Source: Hyphochytrium catenoides | Taxonomy: Eukaryota; Protista; Hyphochytriomycota | Reading direction: 5' to 3' | Assembly: GCA_900088475.1 (NCBI GenBank) | Contig: FLMG01003519.1 | Span: forward strand, 1 to 64,000 | Length of the DNA: 64,000 bases | In this document: piece by piece, positions 6,754-40,621 of the stretch | Numbering within the stretch: position 1 is the stretch's first letter | How the letters are laid out: every line of letters begins with the position of its first letter | Translations under genes and position numbers: made by a program | Notes under the pieces: model-generated | What the model saw: only the letters and a program-made list of their open reading frames with translations | Database searches by the model: none | Told to the model about the DNA's origin: nothing

Positions 6754-9700
6754 ATGATTACGGCTAATAGTGTAGATGGTGCGGAGACAAAGGCAGCTAT
6801 CACCCTACAATGCTTTGTTAGGCGGCTTGCCAGCGCTCGCGCGCTGCGAGACCAAGCGAGTGCCATCTATGTCTTACAGAAAGGTAATTACGTGTTTAAT
6901 CAGCCTTTCTTGAGCCAAGTCCTTTAGGCTTATGCTCCGATAAGCAGATGAAAAATCAGGCGGCCCGACGTACTACTACAACAAGCATCGACAGACAAGG
7001 GTCCCGGAGAACGCTTGGCACCGATGGCTGAAGCTCGGGCGGCTAAAGAAGCCATCTCTTCGTGCCAGGGAAGAAAGCCAAGCCGTGATTCGTCTTCAGC
7101 TTGCTTACCGGACCTTCGCCGCTAGGCTCCGATTCCGGGCCATTTTACGTGACAATTTTCTGAAGGTCTACGGTTGGTGATGACGAAGCGGTAGACGATG
7201 TTATCGACAATGACTAAGTATTGATTTCTTAGACTCCAAGGTGAAGGAGTTCTACTATGTGAACTCAAATACGCGGCAGGTGCTTTCTGCCAAGCCCAAA
7301 TTCCTGTCGGACAATGACATTGAGGTGGAACATTTCATCCATCGCCGTGCGGTATGCCGGATTGTCGTACCGGACGCATCTGAGAGGGGCAGAACTGCTT
7401 CCGTCTCGAAGGGACAAAACTTGAAAGGACAGCAGAATCCCTCAGCTCCCTTGGTTCACAATTCAGCTGTCCTCGTTACATACCATGGTTTGCCCTGTAT
7501 CTTGGCAACTAACTCGGCCCTAGGAAGCGTCTCCGTGGCAGAGGTTGCTAAGGCACAATTTGACTATGACGGAGGTATACTGCAGCCCACGTCGGATTGA
7601 TGTGTTTATCCAATAACAGTTCCACACAGATCCTACGTCACACCCCTTCTGCGTCAACCTTAGGCCAGACATTTTGTTCTTCTCTTCGGATACGCCAATG
7701 ACAGCTTATCCCTCGGAGAAGGAACTCAACTTTTCTCTTGTCGCCTGTGACGCTTCCACCCTTGACGAGAGTGGCTCCGCCAGGGCAATTTCCCTCCAGC
7801 AAAGCGACGCAAAGAACTCATGCTCGGCTGACATTCGAGATGGTCCGTTCGAAGTCCTCATTCAATCCTTCAGCTCTCTATCATTATCAATCCATTCGAT
7901 CCTCATTCAATCCTTCAGCTCTCTACCAATATCCTTATTAACAAGCTCCCCTTAGGTGATCCCGTTGAGATTGTGGGACACTCAGGCCAACAAGTGCGCG
8001 CAGTTATCCAAGGGATCATTACCGGCGTTAGCAAAGACAATCAAGGGAAGCCAACCGACATCGCTTATGAAGTGTCGCGATCACTAGGCATGCTTGTCGG
8101 TGCCCCTATCTTTAGACATGGTAGACTCGTTGGGCTTCACCGCTCCGCAGACGAGTTATCCAAGAAAAGCTATAAGGGTCTTGGCATCACGCGGCTTATC
8201 GCGTACATTGAACGAGCCGCAGGTGCGCTTCTTAGCTGATGAGGTCAGCGTCCTTATGCTTTAATATACTGCTCCTTACGTCCTCGCATACCAGCAACTA
8301 TCAATCTAAGCTGCACTAACAACTGTTTCGCTACCATAGTGCCGGAACCGCCGCTCATTGTAGACTGCCTAACGACCGAGAAGTCAATTGAGTTGAATTT
8401 CACTCGACCACTGTACCACACCGAGATCCATGGTCTCGAATCAGCTTTTTTGTTGGAAATGGCCTACGGGGATGCGCCCCGGGCTAAGGAAGGAAACCTA
8501 GCGGGAGGACGTAATGCCAAAGATCTCGAGTTCCATGAGGTTTATCGTGGCCAAGAAACCAGCTTCTCTGTCTTTGGACTTTCTGCTAGCACAAGCTACA
8601 CTTTCCGTCTGCGACTAATCAACCAGATCGCTAGGAGCAAGTGGAGTGATGCCCTCACAGTTAAGACAATCCCAGGTGAGGTCTTCCGCTTCACTACCAG
8701 CAAGTTACGCCCATTTGGCTCATCCTGCCTATACTACTTTCTAGCCATAAACCACCCTTCTCTTACTACCAAGCTGGATGGTGACGGATACCAATCAGTG
8801 AAGGTTCTTATGAAGCATTGGCAGGACCCACGCATTGTAATGGAGGCAACCCGGGCACTCTCAACGCTTTGCTTAGGGAAAAGTTGTACGGAAAAAGTTC
8901 GTTCGTTATCTGTACCGACCCTTCTGTTAATACACTTGCTGCCCCTTGGACTGCAGACAGATGGCGCGACGAAGTCAGGTCCACTGAGAAGCGATATCTT
9001 GATTGTGTGAAGTGTCTTGTAAATATTCTCGAGCAGCCGCCCGAGATATATGACAGTGAAGGGAGGTTCTATGCCAACATTGCCTGCATACTTGAGGCAG
9101 TTTGCGTGGATGGAGGTACGGCGAATGACTCCGGCTATAAAGTACAAGTACAGCTCTAACAGTGTCATGCTATTGGTCAAGGGGATCTTTTTCCCATGAG
9201 GGCCGACAGCCAGGGTTTGCTAGCCGCCCTTATATCATTTATCCAAAGTTGCACCGTCACGAGACCAAGGTGTCTTGGATCAATTCTTAGTCTGGTCCTG
9301 GAGCTTGTTTCCACTTGTGGTCAGTTTGTTCAGCTCCTCATGTCAATCTACCCGCGTCACTGAAGGAATGTAACTTCACAGACATGCTAAAGCATAAGCT
9401 TCTTACGCTAAATGGAGTCCAGAAGCTTTTGCGTGCTCTGGAGGAGTTGTTAGATTTTGATGACGTAGTTAAAGAGGCATGTCGACTCATTGCTACACTG
9501 GCGCTCAACAATGGTAAGGTAACATGTTGTTGGAAGCGGATTTGTCCTGCCAACACAGTCCTCCAATCTGCACAAAATTCCCCGCTACAGTCCCGTTCCA
9601 GACCGCAATGATGGAACACGGAGGACTCTCCTTGCTGTCTGAAGTGCTCACGTCTGCCGTTGCGGATGACTTTGGGGTTGCCAGATGGGCACTCCTTGCT

Positions 9701-34310: not shown

Positions 34311-37300
34311 TTACTGAGAAGTAGCTGGTCCTTTGAGGAAGAAATTGGACAGCGAGGCTACAGGTCCTCCACCTTGCCTTGGGCCGACAGGAGTTTTCAT
34401 CGTCACGTAGTCAACTATTCCTTCTCGACTCTCGTAGGCACCAATCTTGGGGAAAGATGGTGAAGCGATTGGCGCTGCTTGTACCCTTGTACTCACGATG
34501 CCCCCCTTCTGAAACCTATCGAGTGGTTCTGTCGGTGGCATATCTGGCCCCCTGTTCCCTTGTCTTGACAATCTTGAAGCAATGACGGAAAGGCTAAGCG
34601 GAGGAGCTGCATAACTCTTCTCAAACGGTGCAGATCCAGACCCGGAGTGAATCGCACTTAAGAGTGTGCCTCGCTGTGCAGGCAATGTCGTATGACGGTC
34701 ACGAAAGTGAGGACTAATCCAGCCGTCAGGCTCCAATATGTCTCCATTCTGCTTCTCCAAAAACAGGTGGTTGGTTAACGCTAAAAGGCAGCGTCTATAT
34801 TTCGTTAACAGGTGGCTGCTAACTTTGCGGTTGGCCCTGCGCACACGCCGTTCCAAAAAGGATGGGTTGATCATCACACTTCCGACCTTGGTGATCACGA
34901 CCTCAGTGCCGATATGCTTGAAGTTTTCTCCAATCCAGCCGGGCATGGATAGGATCCCGACAATCATGTCTCCATCACAGACGAGGCGGTAGGCATACGG
35001 GATGACTTGATTGAAGATGTTTGCGAACTGGAGGTTGCCCACTCTTGGAGATCCGAAGTTGACTAGTCCAACCCAGTTGCGCAATCTGCCCTCTAGCTTC
35101 AGATCAAGTGCAGCGAGTGTGGCGAGGGCGCCGCCAAGACTGCAGATGAAAGAGAGGAGATAGTTTAGTAAAGAAGCGTCAATAATGAAGACTAGAAAAA
35201 AAGCAAATCATATAATACCTGTGTCCGGTACAGAGTATATCCCAATTAGCCGTTGGACCGCTTCTGACAATCTCCAACACGCTCTCTAGAACCTCCTCCC
35301 GAACTGCGGAATAGGCTTTCCAAAACCCCGAATGAATCTTGCATTGGCGAGCTTCGCCTTCCACAGTGAAGGTTGCCTTGGTCTTGACAAGCAGGACATC
35401 AACGCCGACGTTCCTTCAGAAACGGAGAAAATGACAGCCCAATTATGACTCAGTATTGACCCGATCCTTGCGACTACTGCTCTTACCTGAAGCTGCTCGT
35501 TCCTCTGAAGGCTATCACTATCTGTCCTCTCCCCACAGCGATGAGCCCATGAGTATCATGCTCTTCATTGTGGATATACTTCACAATACGGTAGCCTAAC
35601 TCTTCGAAGCGGAGCTCATCGATGGTAGCCTCCATCGAAGTACCAATGGCTGGATGAAGAAGTGTGACATATAGGCGCGCAATGCGTGGTGGACTCAATT
35701 CATCGAGGAGAAAAGCGATTGTAACAGGGACATAGAGATAAAACCAGGAATAAGGCCCACGACAAATTCAAGAAGACTCTGACAGGAGCCGTGTCCCCTA
35801 GCGATAGAGATTGCGGTTTTATGGCGAGTGTACCTGTTGGGGGCGGGAGGTAAACTTCATGCGAAAAGTTGAACATGTTGCAAGCAGTTTCCACGCAAAA
35901 GTACTTTTTATGCTGGGACGGGCTCTTAGGATCTTTCCCTACTTTCCTGTCGTACCTATAGAGAGGACAAAGAGGACATAAGACCGAGATATGGGTACTG
36001 GCCATCATCATTCTTCTTAGCCTGTGCATTCATCAACTTACCTCAAGGCCCCATTCTCTCGGTACACAAATTTCCTTCTGATCTTGCTCTTGCCACTGGG
36101 CACATAGAAGAAGAACGCCAAAGTCACGACCATAGTGAACTCAAAGAGCGCCTTCAATCTTGGAATGTAGGGTCTCGCCAACCCAGATACCACTAAAGAG
36201 CAGTGGTGAGGGCAGGTTAGAGACGTCACCTGCCGAGAAAATTTACGGATCATCTCACCTGAGGCCTCTGTTTCGGTAGGGACTGACTGGAATAAGGCAG
36301 GTGGGGCGAGGAACTCCACGCTCTTTTCCACAAAGTAGAGTATCAAGTAAAGGATGAGCTGCGGTAAGAGACATTGGTCGTTTAGAGGCTATTCCTATAA
36401 GATACGGAGGGAAAATAGTCGTACTCACCATGGGGCGAAGGGTGCGGTAGCTCAACTGCTGAAAGCGAGAAGAAATATAGGGGATGGGCCTCAAGAAGAC
36501 ACCCGTTCGATACAGGACGAACATGAGATAGAAAAGAAAGAGGCAGTTCATTCCGAACATCACGCTCATCATCACCACAACGAGAACTCCATCTTCAGTT
36601 GAAGTCAGGTCTACTCCGGTCATGGGGTAAGGGTCGGGCCTCTTCTTAAAGTAGAGAATGGCGCAAGCATGGACCGCTAAATGGGCGATGACATATAGTG
36701 TTTTGCCGATGTAGAAACCAGCTGTCGGAGAGGTCCCATTTAGACGAAGACCGTCCTAAACAGATTGTAGAAGATATCTTTGAATACAGGGTCCTAAAGG
36801 AGAAAAATTTAGCTGCGCTCTTACCACCAGACAGACGAGGAAGACGTTGAAAAAAACCCGTGCTAAGCCCCCTAATATTGATGAGGCTAGTCCCAGTGAG
36901 TGACCGTAAGCAGCTCCAAGCTCCAGTACCAATCCTGCAAGATTCTAAGGATGAGCGTGTCAGACCCATAGGAGGCCAGCATACGCGTGAGAGCAATGAC
37001 ACAATCCACACCTGCTTGAGAATCATTGTCACAACCAGCAAGCAGACAAATCTTCTCTCAAGAAGCCAGTTCTGCCAGCCTTTGCCAAACTTGAGCAATG
37101 CGCGCATATAAATGGCTAATGTCACGATGGACAATAACACCATAATGATAGTACTAGCAGCGAGGAAGTAGCCCCAGAAGTTTGGTGAGCCCGTATAGAA
37201 GACAGTCGGGATCGCATGCTTAGCGTTCCCTGCCAACGCGATGTTCGTTTGGCGGAGAACGACCTTCGCCGGGAATATACTTGTCGACTCGGTGGAACTA

Positions 37301-39099
37301 CCCTTAGTTTCCGCCTAGGACAGAGGTACCAGGCTTAGGGCGATATAAAGAAGACAGCTGGCGCAAAACGTTTTAGGTGTACCCTAAACACATTTTCTCC
37401 GCAATAGAGCTTGTATTTCTCTGCCTGTGCTGGCGATGCCCCTTCCAGACCTTGTTTGGATCCGGAGCATGCAAAGTACCAAGCTGTGCCGGTTACGTTT
37501 GCCTGAAAATTGATGCTGAAGTCGGAGAAAGAGCCTTGTCGGCCCTGTGGCAGAAGAAAAGAGTCAGGTTAAAAGGCTGGAGAGACATGCACGGTGAAGC
37601 TAACTTAAGAGGTACGGTCCTACGTGAATATCTGAGCCGAACGGCAGACTGAAGACAGGTCTTTTAGTGCAGATGGCCCGATTTTTAGCAAGGTTCTTTG
37701 CTGGTGTCGTGGTTTGGTCCCTCCAAAGCGGCACAATTGAAGAGCTACCGCCGGTGCAGACTGATGGTGCTGGAGGATTGAGCTTCTGAATAACCTGGAC
37801 CCGTTTTCCGCCCCTTGTTCCCATCATCGAAACAGTGACATCGAATGTCATGTCCATAGACCAGCCATCAAAGATTGGTGTTTCGCTGGTATTCCCGGCA
37901 ATCGGTGCCGCAGCTGCTAGTTGGTCCCAAAAATATGTTCTAGAGCCATTCGCTACCCTGTACACAGGGTTTGAGGAGGAACCCCTTAGCGTTGTTTCGT
38001 CCAAAATGAGTGTTAGTAAGTCCTTCTCAGTGCCGACGTTTTGAAGATAAACTTCTGGTGCCCATGAGTATCTATAGCCAATGCTGTCCAGCAGCTCTCC
38101 ACCGGTAGAGAAGGTGAATGATCCAGACATCAGGGTAGAGGATCCGAGGGTCTTGTATAGGAGTAGATCTGGATTCTCTAAGATCCGAATTTCCCCACTG
38201 CTAGAGGCTTGAAGGACAATCACAATCAAGGCGATAACTGTCAAGAAGACGCCGAGCATCCCCATAAAAGTGGCTTTGATAACTCCAGGAGACAGTTCCT
38301 CCAGCTTGATGCGATAGCTGTCCATTGTGACGCCGGACGGAGCGTACGCAAGCTAGGGATAGAGATACCATCAGCGGGCATATGATTTGGAAGACGACGT
38401 GGTGCTTCTTCGGAGTTGACTTACCCGTCTGGGATCTACCCATCCCTTCCTCTCAAGCCGCTCAATCATTGGATTGGCCACAGCGGCCTCTTCTAAGTCT
38501 TCAACCTTTGGATTGCGATCTTTTATATGGCTATGGGGTCGTTCTCCAGCTGCATCACCAGAGAGACGGGCGAAGGTATGGGCAGCTCTTTCAGAGATGA
38601 CGCGGCCATTAAGATGCCTTATTCCCACACTAATAAGGCTAGTGAGCTTCTTCTTGGTCTTTTTTAGCTGCCTTCCTCCCCAGCAAGAGGTGACGACGCA
38701 GCTGAGTAACATGAGGCAGAAGGTAAAGATTACCAGCAACGGCATAGAAAACCATACTACCGTCCCTACTCCCGTAAGCTCGCAGAATCCCTGAAACACT
38801 ATGGTTTCATTGAATGCCGTCACTGCCCTTCTCTGGCACTTTGAGAGCCAATCCAAACAAGAGCACTGCAAGTTCCCAACGTTGATGCAATTTCTAGTCG
38901 AGTTTGACACGTCTACAAACGGTGTTTTGAGCCCCACCATGGACATGTAGCCCTCATAGAAGTTTTGAGGAAGAAGCCTAAAGCTCCTGGGAGGAAAGAG
39001 GCGGGACTCTTGGATCGTGCATTGGTGGTCGGCCGTCACCTGAAGGAGCTGCAAGAGCTGTATGGAACAATGCTTACCATTAGCTGGGTCTGGGAACAC
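34311..39099 (-). CDS. TMEM181/Wntless-like multipass membrane domain fused to a class-3 lipase (5' end uncertain)
   Basis: WQNWLLERRFVCLLVVTMILKQ|N, CLV|DGLRLNG...FYIGK and FLFYLMFVLYR...RF parallel TMEM181/WLS. Lipase motifs: IVIAFRGT, KIHSGF, TGH|SLGGALATL, NFGSPRVGN, DGDMIV, FKHIGTEV, SSHLLTKY. The upstream ORF 38371-39099 splices in frame (DPRR|LAYAPSGVTMDSY). Confidence 0.85.
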
Positions 39100-40621
39100 C
39101 AGACAGGAAGTAAAATAACCTTACCAGTCCAACTGTAAGAATGGTTAGCTGCATCTTCTGAGCCATCAGGCTGCACTGAACCATCATATTAGGCTACTAC
39201 GAGGTGTAGCAAGCATTACTTGAAGGTAATAGAGGTTCATCCCGGCCTGCGCCTCCGACAGCATCTACTTGGCTGCAGCATGGCATCATATATCTACCTC
39301 TTTGCAAGGAAGAGAGGATGGGGTCTTTTTTCCTGGAGTCTTCCTATCCAACGCTAATGAACACGCAGCATCGAGTTCCCTGCAATGGACTTTAGACGGA
39401 AGATGATGATAGTGATGCACATCTGCAGCGACTGTTACTGCTAGAGCTTTACGAGGGATCCTGAGGGCGCAGGTCTTACAACGGGTGGAACTAGGAAGTC
39501 TGAGTTTCAGGTAAGTTCCTTCAGCGCCGAGATCTCTCTGAAGCTCCACAGATCATCATGCTGGCGGGCAACTCTCTGCTGCTTCAAGCTGGCTTCATTG
39601 AACATCATCTTCGGTAGTGTATGCAAAGCCTTTCTCTATGGGCTGATGATTGAGAGTCAGTCCCCTGACCGCTTTCCACACTTTAGACTAGATCCTCACT
39701 TCTCGTGATGGAAACATTTCAAGCAATCGACCATGGAACTTTGTTTCTTTCATACGGAGTATATACAGGAGAGAACACCAGTAATTTAGAATATAGTGGG
39801 CTTGGCGAGTACTGTAGTTTTTACCCAATCAGTGGATAATACAGATAGATAGGGAAGTTAAGGCTATCCAGGATAGCAAACTTGCAAAACCTTCTTCACA
39901 ATAATGTCAGGAAATCTACAGGTCAGCTGGTCTAAGAAGGAGGGAGATACACTCCCTACATCCACTGTAGAACTGACTCTCATCAGAGTCAATAGTTGGG
40001 CCTTCTGGTGTCCGTCCGATAACCCTCGAGGAAGATGCAGGTTGGGACGTGTGATGTGAGGAGAGGGCGGAGAGAGGAAGGAAGAAAAGTTGCCATCTTC
40101 GTAAGGCCTTCATTACGAGTAGAACCTCCTCCTGGTCAAATCTCTTCTGACTTGCTCGTTGAGGCCTCCCTAGGATGGCCTGTGGCAGAGTTTGGATTGT
40201 TATTATTGCTGTTGCTAACCGTTTCCCTGAGCCGCTAACCGCTAGAGAGTGCACCTGTAGAAGCCTGGAGGAGAAAGGTAAAGGTGCATCATGGGCACCC
40301 GAAAGGGCACACTCCTCACGCCTGATGATGGAGCAGTAGGATAATATAAAAGCAAGCTAAGACGCACATTCAATAAGTTTTAGGGCTATCTGGAACTCCG
40401 AGCTGCCTCTCTCTCTTGTCTCTTATAAAAAGACCTGACCACCGCGTTTGATCCATAAGCTACGACTATTACGCATTCCTTCTGATCACCTTTTCCTTCT
40501 CTTGCTCGCCTCCTGTAAGTCTTTCTCCTTTCTCCAAGGCTGCTTGATGATGACATAACGTGTCGAGGGATTGCGCAACCAAAGCACACTTCGAACGTGG
40601 CCTAAGACACGCTCAAGAACA

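What the first reader, a model, noticed from the sequence alone, without database searches (positions are those of the whole stretch)
34311..39099. Wntless/TMEM181-like membrane domain fused to an apparently active class-3 lipase
Seen: the spliced gene encodes a multipass region matching TMEM181/WLS (MIG-14 family) in several ordered motifs. WLLERRFVCLL..KQ|N compares with W.IEQKW..LL..L.YND, DGLRLNG..FYIGK compares with HGIRVQG..FYLPK, and there is a large luminal loop after the first TM. This runs into a C-terminal Lipase_3 domain with intact GHSLG, an Asp in DGDMIV and a His in SSHLL. Established: animal WLS carries palmitoleoylated Wnt in a membrane lipid cavity, and Wnt ligands are animal-specific. 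Inference: in a Wnt-less protist this fusion may couple lipid binding or transport to deacylation, hinting at the ancestral, pre-Wnt role of the family. An extra Cys-rich TM module upstream (38371-39099) adds a further domain.
Basis: partly seen in the sequence, partly recalled or inferred. Interest (0 to 1): 0.8.

Follow-up and report, generated by a model that had tools for sequence, protein, structure and literature searches.

The report
Wntless-like membrane domain fused to lipase
This protist gene most likely joins a membrane domain of the Wntless/TMEM181 type, known in animals for carrying lipid-modified Wnt signals, to an apparently active lipase, and golden-brown algae carry the same undescribed fusion, so relatives of the animal Wnt carrier exist outside animals as parts of lipid enzymes.

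Summary
On the minus strand, 38325-34311, eleven exons joined by ten GT-AG introns give a 1057-codon frame. It encodes one N-terminal membrane helix, a luminal region of about 290 residues with sequons, seven more helices, and a class-3 lipase with Ser, Asp and His in place.

No membrane exon matches Pfam WLS-like_TM, WLS in the PDB or any database protein on its own. The link came through a relative. Beside the lipase on metagenome contig L001 lies a reading frame that passes Pfam WLS-like_TM (51.5 bits, cut-off 28.3) and runs straight into the lipase head.

That frame belongs to a chrysophyte-type family:
- One MMETSP transcript ORF covers the whole fusion.
- 24 of 40 members pass PF06664.

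A profile of this family hits only exons 3, 5, 8 and 9 among 1692 open stretches of the window, in order and with family-like spacing.

So the architecture is supported, by transitive homology. The upstream Cys-rich module is unresolved and is not a family feature. No RNA data were available. The scan noted this same stretch before (s1-345857).

The parts
37624..38325 (-). Exon 1: ATG, short cytosolic N-terminus, membrane helix 1 (FMGMLGVFLTVIALIVIVL), and the first 190 or so residues of the luminal region with sequons NGS and NTS.
   Evidence: ORF and hydropathy peak of 2.91. AF2 is confident only for the helix. The I-x-LE motif before the helix resembles the family consensus P-x-I-x-LE (by eye).
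37383..37544 (-). Exon 2: luminal region, sequon NVT, two Cys.
   Evidence: Open frame between CACAG| and |GTACAC, phase 0. No significant similarity to relatives.
37012..37314 (-). Exon 3: end of the luminal region, helix 2, a basic cytosolic loop, and the start of helix 3 with WLLERRF (37048-37068).
   Evidence: Family HMM 16.6 bits as the exon and 9.5 bits as the whole open stretch. hhalign gives 88% (P 2.9e-6) to family columns 284-330, which hold the EQKW motif. tblastn places it inside the Pfam WLS-like_TM span of L001.
36825..36944 (-). Exon 4: rest of helix 3 and helix 4. The conserved 'QN' is made by the exon 3/4 splice.
   Evidence: Hydropathy 2.08. The distance from E(RRF) to FY(IGK) is 69 residues against 68 in the family consensus (counted by hand). 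No significant hit on its own.
36429..36755 (-). Exon 5: FYIGK, helices 5 and 6, and the cytosolic loop IPYISSRFQQLSYR (36444-36485).
   Evidence: Best anchor to the family: HMM 30.3 bits (E 7.5e-8 among all 1692 open stretches of the window), hhalign 94%, and tblastn to L001 at 45% identity over 44 residues, E 2e-6.
36259..36358 (-). Exon 6: helix 7 and the start of a short luminal loop.
   Evidence: Open frame, donor CAG|GTGAGA. The 66-nt intron that follows is in frame and has no stop. Splicing it gives a spacing of 56 residues against 60 in the family; retaining it gives 78 (hand count).
36042..36192 (-). Exon 7: helix 8 and the basic cytosolic linker.
   Evidence: Hydropathy 1.76. Weak but colinear hits to the family. 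Donor GAG|GTAAGT.
35834..35955 (-). Exon 8: linker and the N-terminal helix of the lipase domain (YFCVETACNMFNFSHEVY).
   Evidence: HMM 15.1 bits, hhalign 87%. The same motif lies in L001 inside the same uninterrupted ORF as the WLS-like_TM domain, and it opens the stand-alone Coccomyxa lipase P0009.
35487..35649 (-). Exon 9: lipase strands up to AFRGTSSF.
   Evidence: HMM 22.3 bits, hhalign 96%. The length between the exon 8 motif and GY fits the family to within one residue.
35219..35413 (-). Exon 10: HSGFWKAY ... CTGH, plus the first two bases (AG) of the nucleophile Ser codon.
   Evidence: Pfam Lipase_3 27.4 bits, cut-off 22.
34311..35139 (-). Exon 11: third base of the Ser codon, LGGALA, catalytic Asp (34968-34970), catalytic His (34812-34814), a 160-residue low-complexity tail, and stop TAA.
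   Evidence: Pfam Lipase_3 46 bits. The Asp aligns with D203 of Rhizomucor miehei lipase 1TGL. Asp57 and His109 are invariant in nine relatives.
38425..39120 (-). Candidate upstream exon ('E0'): Cys-rich segment with two sequons, one membrane helix, KKTKKK, and a charged tail of about 85 residues. Whether it belongs to this gene is unresolved.
   Evidence: Open for 249 codons, with codon-usage score like the real exons (0.14). A CGG|GTAAGT...CCCTAG| intron of 72 nt would join it in phase to 38352. No Pfam family and no similarity to relatives. The 22 relatives checked have only one helix before the luminal domain, where their N-terminus is present.

Best explanation
This is one gene for an integral membrane protein of about 1057 residues. 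Its N-terminal two thirds are a divergent member of the Wntless/TMEM181 branch of the GOLD-plus-seven-helix (GOST) proteins: one N-terminal helix, a glycosylated luminal domain, and a seven-helix bundle. Its C-terminal third is a class-3 (fungal-type) alpha/beta-hydrolase lipase with a complete Ser-Asp-His triad.

Shown here: the exon structure, the lipase identity and triad, homology of exons 3, 5, 8 and 9 to a chrysophyte-type family with the same fusion, that family's Pfam WLS-like_TM membership, and its WLS-like predicted fold.

Inferred: by the WLS topology and the positive-inside rule, both termini are cytosolic. The lipase would therefore work on glycerolipids of the cytosolic leaflet of secretory or endosomal membranes. 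The GOST module would place it there and perhaps gate it in response to something bound on the luminal side. That is the logic of the seven-helix-plus-enzyme 'GPCR-bigram' proteins of stramenopiles and of the membrane-anchored diacylglycerol lipases.
For: Gene model: ten GT-AG introns, consistent phases, 3171 nt.

Lipase:
- Pfam Lipase_3 scores 27.4 and 46 bits, above the cut-off of 22.
- The Asp aligns to D203 of 1TGL.
- Asp and His are invariant in relatives.

Fusion in relatives:
- L001:7444-9060 is one ORF holding PF06664 (E 1.2e-13, 51.5 bits, cut-off 28.3) and the lipase head.
- P0144 carries both Pfam domains.
- P0162, in the 90%-identity cluster that also holds an Ochromonadaceae sp. 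CCMP2298 protein, is a 1289-residue MMETSP transcript ORF with the whole fusion.

Window to family:
- The family HMM hits only exons 5, 9, 8 and 3 among the window's 1692 open stretches (27.6, 20.8, 13.0 and 9.5 bits; the next best is 2.2), and the hits are colinear.
- hhalign gives 88-96% for the same four exons.
- Spacings between motifs agree to within 1-4 residues.

Family to WLS:
- 24 of 40 members pass PF06664.
- The AF2 model has pLDDT 73.8.
- The top four Foldseek PDB hits are human WLS, E 2e-10 to 7e-9.
- The top two Atlas clusters are WLS-like_TM with WLS_GOLD/TMEM181_GOLD.

Topology: hydropathy peaks and sequons.
Against: - No exon of the membrane part hits PF06664, WLS_GOLD or TMEM181_GOLD, or any PDB WLS chain by sequence.
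- The family profile does not find WLS in PDB sequences either.
- The luminal region (exons 1-2) shows no similarity to the family's luminal domain, and its fold could not be predicted.
- Exon 5 found nothing in 1.84 billion representative proteins.
- There is no transcript evidence for this genome.
- Substrate, location and any regulation by the membrane module are untested.
Confidence: 0.75

Rival explanations
1. Coupled handover: the seven-helix cavity binds a lipid or a lipid-modified cargo and passes it to the fused lipase for deacylation. This lipid-handling job would be the ancestral role of the Wntless family.
For: The fusion is conserved between this genome and chrysophytes, which argues for functional coupling of the two parts. 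WLS holds the Wnt acyl chain in its helix bundle, and GOST cavities open to the membrane (PMC9711517).
Against: The cavity of WLS and TMEM87A opens to the luminal or outer leaflet (PMC9711517 abstract), while the C-terminal lipase should be cytosolic. No residue of a lipid cavity could be mapped in the window protein, and there is no experimental data.
Confidence: 0.12
2. Two adjacent genes: a membrane protein that stops at TAA 36040-36038, and a soluble lipase that starts at ATG 36029, which lies in frame with exon 8.
For: That ATG exists and is in frame (ORF 35700-36029). Stand-alone lipases of this subfamily exist, for example Coccomyxa P0009. No RNA data.
Against: The stretch between them is a textbook 86-nt intron, GAG|GTAAGT...TCTCTATAG|. 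Two genes would be only 8 nt apart. In relatives the junction is one uninterrupted ORF and one transcript.
Confidence: 0.05
3. The membrane part is an unrelated multipass domain. The resemblance to the WLS-like family reflects helix composition plus a shared lipase.
For: No direct Pfam or PDB hit for any membrane exon. Exons 1, 2, 4 and 6 are not significant against the family.
Against: The strongest match is a polar loop, IPYISSRFQQLSYR against LPYMSTRYLQLSFR, not a hydrophobic helix. Other helices in the window (exon 1, E0) score nothing. The hits are colinear, have matching spacings, and fall inside the Pfam-matched span of L001.
Confidence: 0.06

Closest known systems
Unnamed chrysophyte-type family found here (MMETSP transcript ORF P0162 and NCBI KAJ1407808.1 of Ochromonadaceae sp. 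CCMP2298, both in one 90%-identity cluster; Mallomonas annulata EukProt EP01041_P002489; metagenome contig L001)
   Same: Same order of parts: N-terminal helix, luminal domain, seven helices, linker, and a class-3 lipase of the same subfamily (FCV-x-x-A head, DPSF-x-E...S-x-H-x-L tail). The conserved motifs and their spacings are shared.
   Different: - Only about 25-45% identity, and only in the best blocks.
- The window's luminal region is about 80 residues longer and not recognisably similar.
- The linker is about 19 residues shorter.
- The window lipase lacks the long disordered insert of P0162.
- The window gene has ten introns, while L001 has few.
Wntless (WLS) and TMEM181, Pfam PF06664 WLS-like_TM, the GOST family (PMC9711517, PMC11605061)
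   Same: Extra N-terminal helix plus luminal domain plus seven-helix bundle. Among the human GOST proteins compared in PMC11605061, that extra helix is noted only for WLS and TMEM181. Relatives of the window protein pass PF06664 and superpose on WLS over its whole chain.
   Different: - Animal WLS and TMEM181 have no enzyme domain.
- The window exons do not hit PF06664 directly.
- No GOLD-domain Pfam model is matched.
- There is presumably no Wnt client, since Wnt ligands are animal-specific (established knowledge).
sn-1 diacylglycerol lipases DAGL alpha/beta (my own knowledge, not tested here)
   Same: A class-3 lipase domain held at the cytosolic face of a membrane by an N-terminal multipass anchor, followed by a regulatory tail.
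   Different: DAGL has four helices, no luminal domain, and no relation to WLS. No sequence comparison was made here.
GPCR-bigrams of oomycetes and other protists, such as GPCR-PIPK (described in bioRxiv 10.1101/2025.04.15.649019)
   Same: A seven-helix domain followed by a cytosolic lipid-metabolising catalytic domain. An unchecked note of this scan (s1-331299) reports a GPCR-PIPK fusion in this genome.
   Different: The seven-helix part here is GOST/WLS-type with a luminal domain and an extra helix, and the enzyme is a lipase. In the one paper my search for 'GPCR-bigram' with 'lipase' returned, each word occurs only once, in a study of oomycete metalloproteases; I did not open it.

Membership tests
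Class-3 lipase (Pfam PF01764 Lipase_3) | Sequence match above Pfam's gathering score | tested here: met
   Exon 10 scores 27.4 bits and exon 11 scores 46 bits, against a cut-off of 22. PDB hits are Rhizomucor and Thermomyces lipases.
Class-3 lipase (Pfam PF01764 Lipase_3) | Ser-Asp-His triad with the nucleophile in G-x-S-x-G | tested here: met
   GHSLG forms across the exon 10/11 splice, AG|T. The Asp of DGD aligns with D203 of 1TGL. Asp57 and His109 of exon 11 are invariant in nine relatives, 52 residues apart against 54 in 1TGL. Activity was not assayed.
WLS-like_TM (Pfam PF06664) | Direct match of the window's own sequence to the Pfam model | tested here: inconclusive
No hit at E up to 10 for any membrane exon taken alone. 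Exons of 33-109 residues against a 247-position model have little power.
WLS-like_TM (Pfam PF06664) | Significant homology to proteins that pass the Pfam cut-off, over the Pfam-matched span | tested here: met
   L001 ORF scores 51.5 bits (cut-off 28.3) over residues 153-417, and 24 of 40 family members pass. Window exons 3, 5 and 7 map to L001 residues 150-198, 302-344 and 402-419.
WLS/TMEM181 branch of GOST proteins | One extra N-terminal helix, then a luminal domain, then seven helices | tested here: met
   Six clear hydropathy peaks (exons 1, 3, 4, 5 twice, 7), plus helix 3, which is split by the exon 3/4 junction, and the less hydrophobic helix 7 in exon 6. Positions match the family, whose model shows 1+7 helices. 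Sequons occur only in the predicted luminal parts, except one in the exon 5 loop.
WLS/TMEM181 branch of GOST proteins | Luminal domain with a GOLD-type beta sandwich | tested here: inconclusive
   The relative's model has a beta sandwich at residues 63-242 that superposes on WLS. For the window itself, exons 1-2 give no Pfam WLS_GOLD or TMEM181_GOLD hit and no similarity to the family. The single-sequence fold failed, pLDDT 38. The Atlas feature search gave only a weak lead to LEA_2-type anchored beta sandwiches.
Wntless proper | Binds and carries lipid-modified Wnt | not testable with these tools
   Wnt ligands are known only from animals (established knowledge). The gene's relatives are chrysophyte algae.

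The most novel reading that the evidence does not exclude
The Wntless/TMEM181 branch of GOST proteins is older than animals and began as the membrane or lipid-presenting half of a lipid-hydrolysing enzyme. The stramenopile fusions would preserve that state, and the animal proteins would have kept the lipid-binding seven-helix cavity after losing the lipase, later turning it to carrying the acyl chain of Wnt.
Probability: 0.1. Interest if true: 0.85.

Novelty: new variant of a known kind. Interest (0 to 1): 0.58.

Why it matters
WLS is studied only as the animal Wnt carrier, and TMEM181 has almost no known function. A 2025 survey did not detect either in choanoflagellates.

This report gives a conserved, intact, non-animal relative that is physically joined to a lipase. 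That is a concrete, testable hint that this branch of GOST proteins works with lipids in general, and it offers an experimental handle: lipase activity as a read-out for what the membrane domain binds.

It also adds a seven-helix-plus-enzyme architecture that I did not find described in the papers searched. The sequences already sit unannotated in databases, or are auto-labelled 'Wnt-binding factor'. So what is new is the recognition and the link between two stramenopile lineages, not a new fold.

Tried and rejected
- RNA evidence: no RNA run was listed for the stretch, so read laying was never used.
- Exon 5 against 1.84 billion representative proteins: 0 hits.
- Exon 1 word search: 0 hits.
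- Exon 5 against metagenome contigs: 233 pattern matches, none confirmed.
- Pfam and NCBIfam on raw ORFs and on trimmed exons: nothing for the membrane part.
- phmmer of exons 3 and 5 against PDB sequences: no WLS, only chance hits to an adhesin repeat and an integrin helix.
- Family profile against PDB sequences: only lipases and feruloyl esterase.
- Atlas feature search on exons 3 and 1: uninformative, or a weak LEA_2 lead.
- Single-sequence AF2 of exon 1: pLDDT 38, only the helix is confident.
- hhalign of exons 1, 2, 4, 6, 10, 11 and E0 against the membrane-plus-head alignment: no signal. Exons 10 and 11 lie beyond that alignment.
- Rejected: two separate genes, and a chance hydrophobic match (see rivals).
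- Literature: I found no description of a WLS-like plus lipase fusion.
Full report
**What is in the sequence**

The minus strand between 38325 and 34311 reads as one gene of eleven exons.
- All ten introns start with GT and end with AG.
- Nine introns are 66-86 nt and one is 184 nt.
- Donors are of the GTAAGT/GTGAGT kind, and acceptors follow pyrimidine-rich runs.
- Exon phases add up to 3171 nt, or 1057 codons, from ATG 38325 to TAA 34313-34311.
- Each exon scores positive in its own frame and negative in the other two in a leave-one-out codon-usage test.

GHSLG exists only in the spliced message, because its Ser codon is split AG|T by the exon 10/11 intron.

**The lipase**

- Pfam Lipase_3 is above its cut-off on exon 10 (27.4 bits) and exon 11 (46 bits); the cut-off is 22.
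- Against solved structures, exon 11 aligns with Rhizomucor miehei lipase. The second Asp of DGDMIV falls on the catalytic D203.
- In an alignment with eight relatives, this Asp and the His of SSHLL are invariant. They lie 52 residues apart, against 54 in 1TGL.
- The nearest lipases (35-44% identity) come from algae and protists such as Symbiodinium, Coccomyxa and Galdieria. They share a distinctive head (FC-x-ETA-x-NM) and tail (DPSF-x-E...S-x-H).
- The head lies in exon 8, so the lipase domain begins one intron after the last membrane helix.

**The membrane part, tested directly**

On its own it is an orphan.
- No membrane exon hits Pfam WLS-like_TM, WLS_GOLD or TMEM181_GOLD, even at E up to 10.
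- Exons 3 and 5 find no WLS chain in PDB sequences.
- Exon 5 found nothing among 1.84 billion representative proteins.
- Exon 1 found nothing in the word search.

**The bridge through relatives**

I fetched the contig of one lipase hit (P0006). This is L001, a 27-kb JGI metagenome contig that also carries an elongation-factor-G/EF-2-type GTPase gene and a CFAP61 gene, so it comes from a flagellated eukaryote. Just upstream of the lipase, on the same strand, lies a 538-residue ORF that passes Pfam PF06664 WLS-like_TM. It scores E 1.2e-13 and 51.5 bits against a cut-off of 28.3, over profile positions 13-245 of 247.

tblastn of the window's exons on L001 gives colinear matches in that frame:

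| Window exon | L001 position | E-value |
|---|---|---|
| 3 | 7891-8037 | 0.08 |
| 5 | 8347-8475 | 2e-6 (45% identity over 44 residues) |
| 7 | 8647-8700 | 0.15 |
| 8 (lipase head) | 8845-8907 | 2e-4 |

The exon 8 match lies inside the same uninterrupted ORF as the WLS-like domain. Exons 10 and 11 then match further downstream. Exons 3, 5 and 7 fall within L001 residues 150-419, which is the Pfam-matched span.

**The family**

The L001 ORF has 50 database relatives.
- Named members come from chrysophytes: Mallomonas annulata and Ochromonadaceae sp. CCMP2298.
- One member, P0162, is a 1289-residue ORF from an MMETSP transcript. It contains the N-terminal helix, luminal domain, seven helices, GHSLGG, DGD and the tail His in one reading frame. 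That is transcript-level proof of the fusion in a relative.
- 24 of 40 aligned members pass PF06664 at E 0.001 or better (best 4e-16). P0144 carries both Pfam domains.
- Most members stop before the lipase core because their contigs end or introns intervene. Their shared consensus still runs into the lipase head, up to the FRG strand.

**Is the window gene really one of them?**

I searched an HMM of the family against all 1692 stop-to-stop stretches of 25 or more codons in the six frames of the window. It picked out exactly four stretches:

| Exon | Bits | E-value |
|---|---|---|
| 5 | 27.6 | 7.5e-8 |
| 9 | 20.8 | 8.7e-6 |
| 8 | 13.0 | 0.0019 |
| 3 | 9.5 | 0.022 |

The hits are in model order, and the next best score anywhere is 2.2 bits. 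hhalign gives 94, 96, 87 and 88% for the same exons, a weak colinear hit for exon 7, and nothing for exons 1, 2, 4 and 6.

The best-matching piece is a polar loop, IPYISSRFQQLSYR against LPYMSTRYLQLSFR. It is not a hydrophobic helix, so composition does not explain the match.

Hand counts on the consensus show matching spacings:
- 69 against 68 residues from E(RRF/QKW) to FY-x-x-K.
- 19 against 20 residues from the head motif to GY.
- 56 against 60 residues from SYR to helix 8, if the in-frame 66-nt intron is spliced out (78 if it is kept).

The conserved Q-N of the family is created in the window by the exon 3/4 splice. These agreements also support the intron boundaries.

**Is the family WLS-like in fold?**

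An AF2 model of P0162 residues 30-790, built with 37 sequences, has mean pLDDT 73.8. It shows a long N-terminal helix, a beta sandwich, seven helices, and then the first lipase strands.
- The four best Foldseek PDB matches are human WLS (7DRT, 7KC4, 8TZR, 8TZS; E 2e-10 to 7e-9). TMEM87A follows.
- In the ESM Atlas, the two nearest clusters carry WLS-like_TM with WLS_GOLD/TMEM181_GOLD.
- Among the human GOST proteins compared in PMC11605061, the extra N-terminal helix is noted only for WLS and TMEM181. The family has it, and so does the window protein.

By sequence alone the family profile does not reach WLS in the PDB, so the relation to WLS proper is remote. I could not test whether TMEM181 or WLS is the nearer branch.

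**Topology and likely working**

Hydropathy gives helix 1 in exon 1 and helices in exons 3, 4, 5 (two) and 7. Helix 3 is split by the exon 3/4 junction, and a less hydrophobic helix 7 lies in exon 6. That makes 1+7, as in the family.
- The region of about 290 residues after helix 1 has three sequons and four Cys.
- The loops after helices 2, 6 and 8 are basic.

With the WLS topology (both termini cytosolic; established from the WLS structures), the lipase and its 160-residue tail face the cytosol. The most economical reading is a membrane-tethered, cytosol-facing lipase of the secretory or endosomal system. Most GOST proteins are reported at the Golgi or Golgi network (PMC11605061). The GOST module would supply location and perhaps control.

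It has to overcome the fact that the WLS and TMEM87A cavities open to the outer leaflet (PMC9711517). None of this is tested.

**One gene or two?**

An ATG at 36029 lies in frame with exon 8, so a separate lipase gene is formally possible. It would start 8 nt after the TAA that would end the membrane protein. The sequence between them is a model 86-nt intron. Relatives have this junction in one ORF and one transcript. I put two genes at about 5%.

**The upstream module**

The ORF at 38371-39120 looks coding. It could join in phase through a 72-nt GT-AG intron, giving a topologically consistent extra helix. However, it has no relatives and no Pfam family. The 22 family members checked have only one helix before the luminal domain, where the N-terminus is present. 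It stays open.

**Organism**

I did not identify it. Other agents' unchecked notes call the genome a stramenopile close to oomycetes. That fits a gene whose only relatives are chrysophytes. It would place the fusion in two distant stramenopile lineages.

**Limits**

- No RNA run was listed.
- The scan noted this same stretch before (s1-345857, the same reading), which is not independent evidence.

Noticed in passing
window 38371-39120 (-): A 249-codon open stretch encodes a Cys-rich segment, one membrane helix, KKTKKK and a charged tail. Codon usage looks like real exons. It has no homologues and no Pfam family. Its stop lies only 45 nt before the ATG of the main gene. It may be a 5' exon, via a 72-nt in-phase intron at 38424-38353, or a tiny separate gene.
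   Followed up: partly
window 36029 (-), inside the exon 7/8 intron: An ATG in frame with exon 8 could give a soluble lipase-only isoform if the intron is retained or an internal promoter is used.
   Followed up: no
window 36258-36193 (-): The exon 6/7 intron is 66 nt, in frame and free of stops. Retaining it would add 22 residues to the last luminal loop. Spacing in relatives favours splicing.
   Followed up: partly
L001:10071-10135 compared with window 35218-35140: The relative on L001 also has an intron inside the GHSLGG motif, 5 nt downstream of the window's position (after the first base of the Gly codon rather than inside the Ser codon). This could be intron sliding or independent gain.
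   Followed up: partly
protein P0160 (NCBI RYY85295.1): A 754-residue member of this eukaryotic family is deposited as 'MAG: hypothetical protein [archaeon]'. It is probably a eukaryotic contig mis-binned into an archaeal genome bin. JGI auto-annotates other members as 'Wnt-binding factor required for Wnt secretion'.
   Followed up: no
same genome, other pieces (notes s1-365064, s1-331299): Earlier unchecked notes report another lipase-3 fusion (with J-domain and EF-hand) and a GPCR-PIP-kinase fusion in this genome. The organism may have several lipid enzymes fused to membrane or signalling modules.
   Followed up: no
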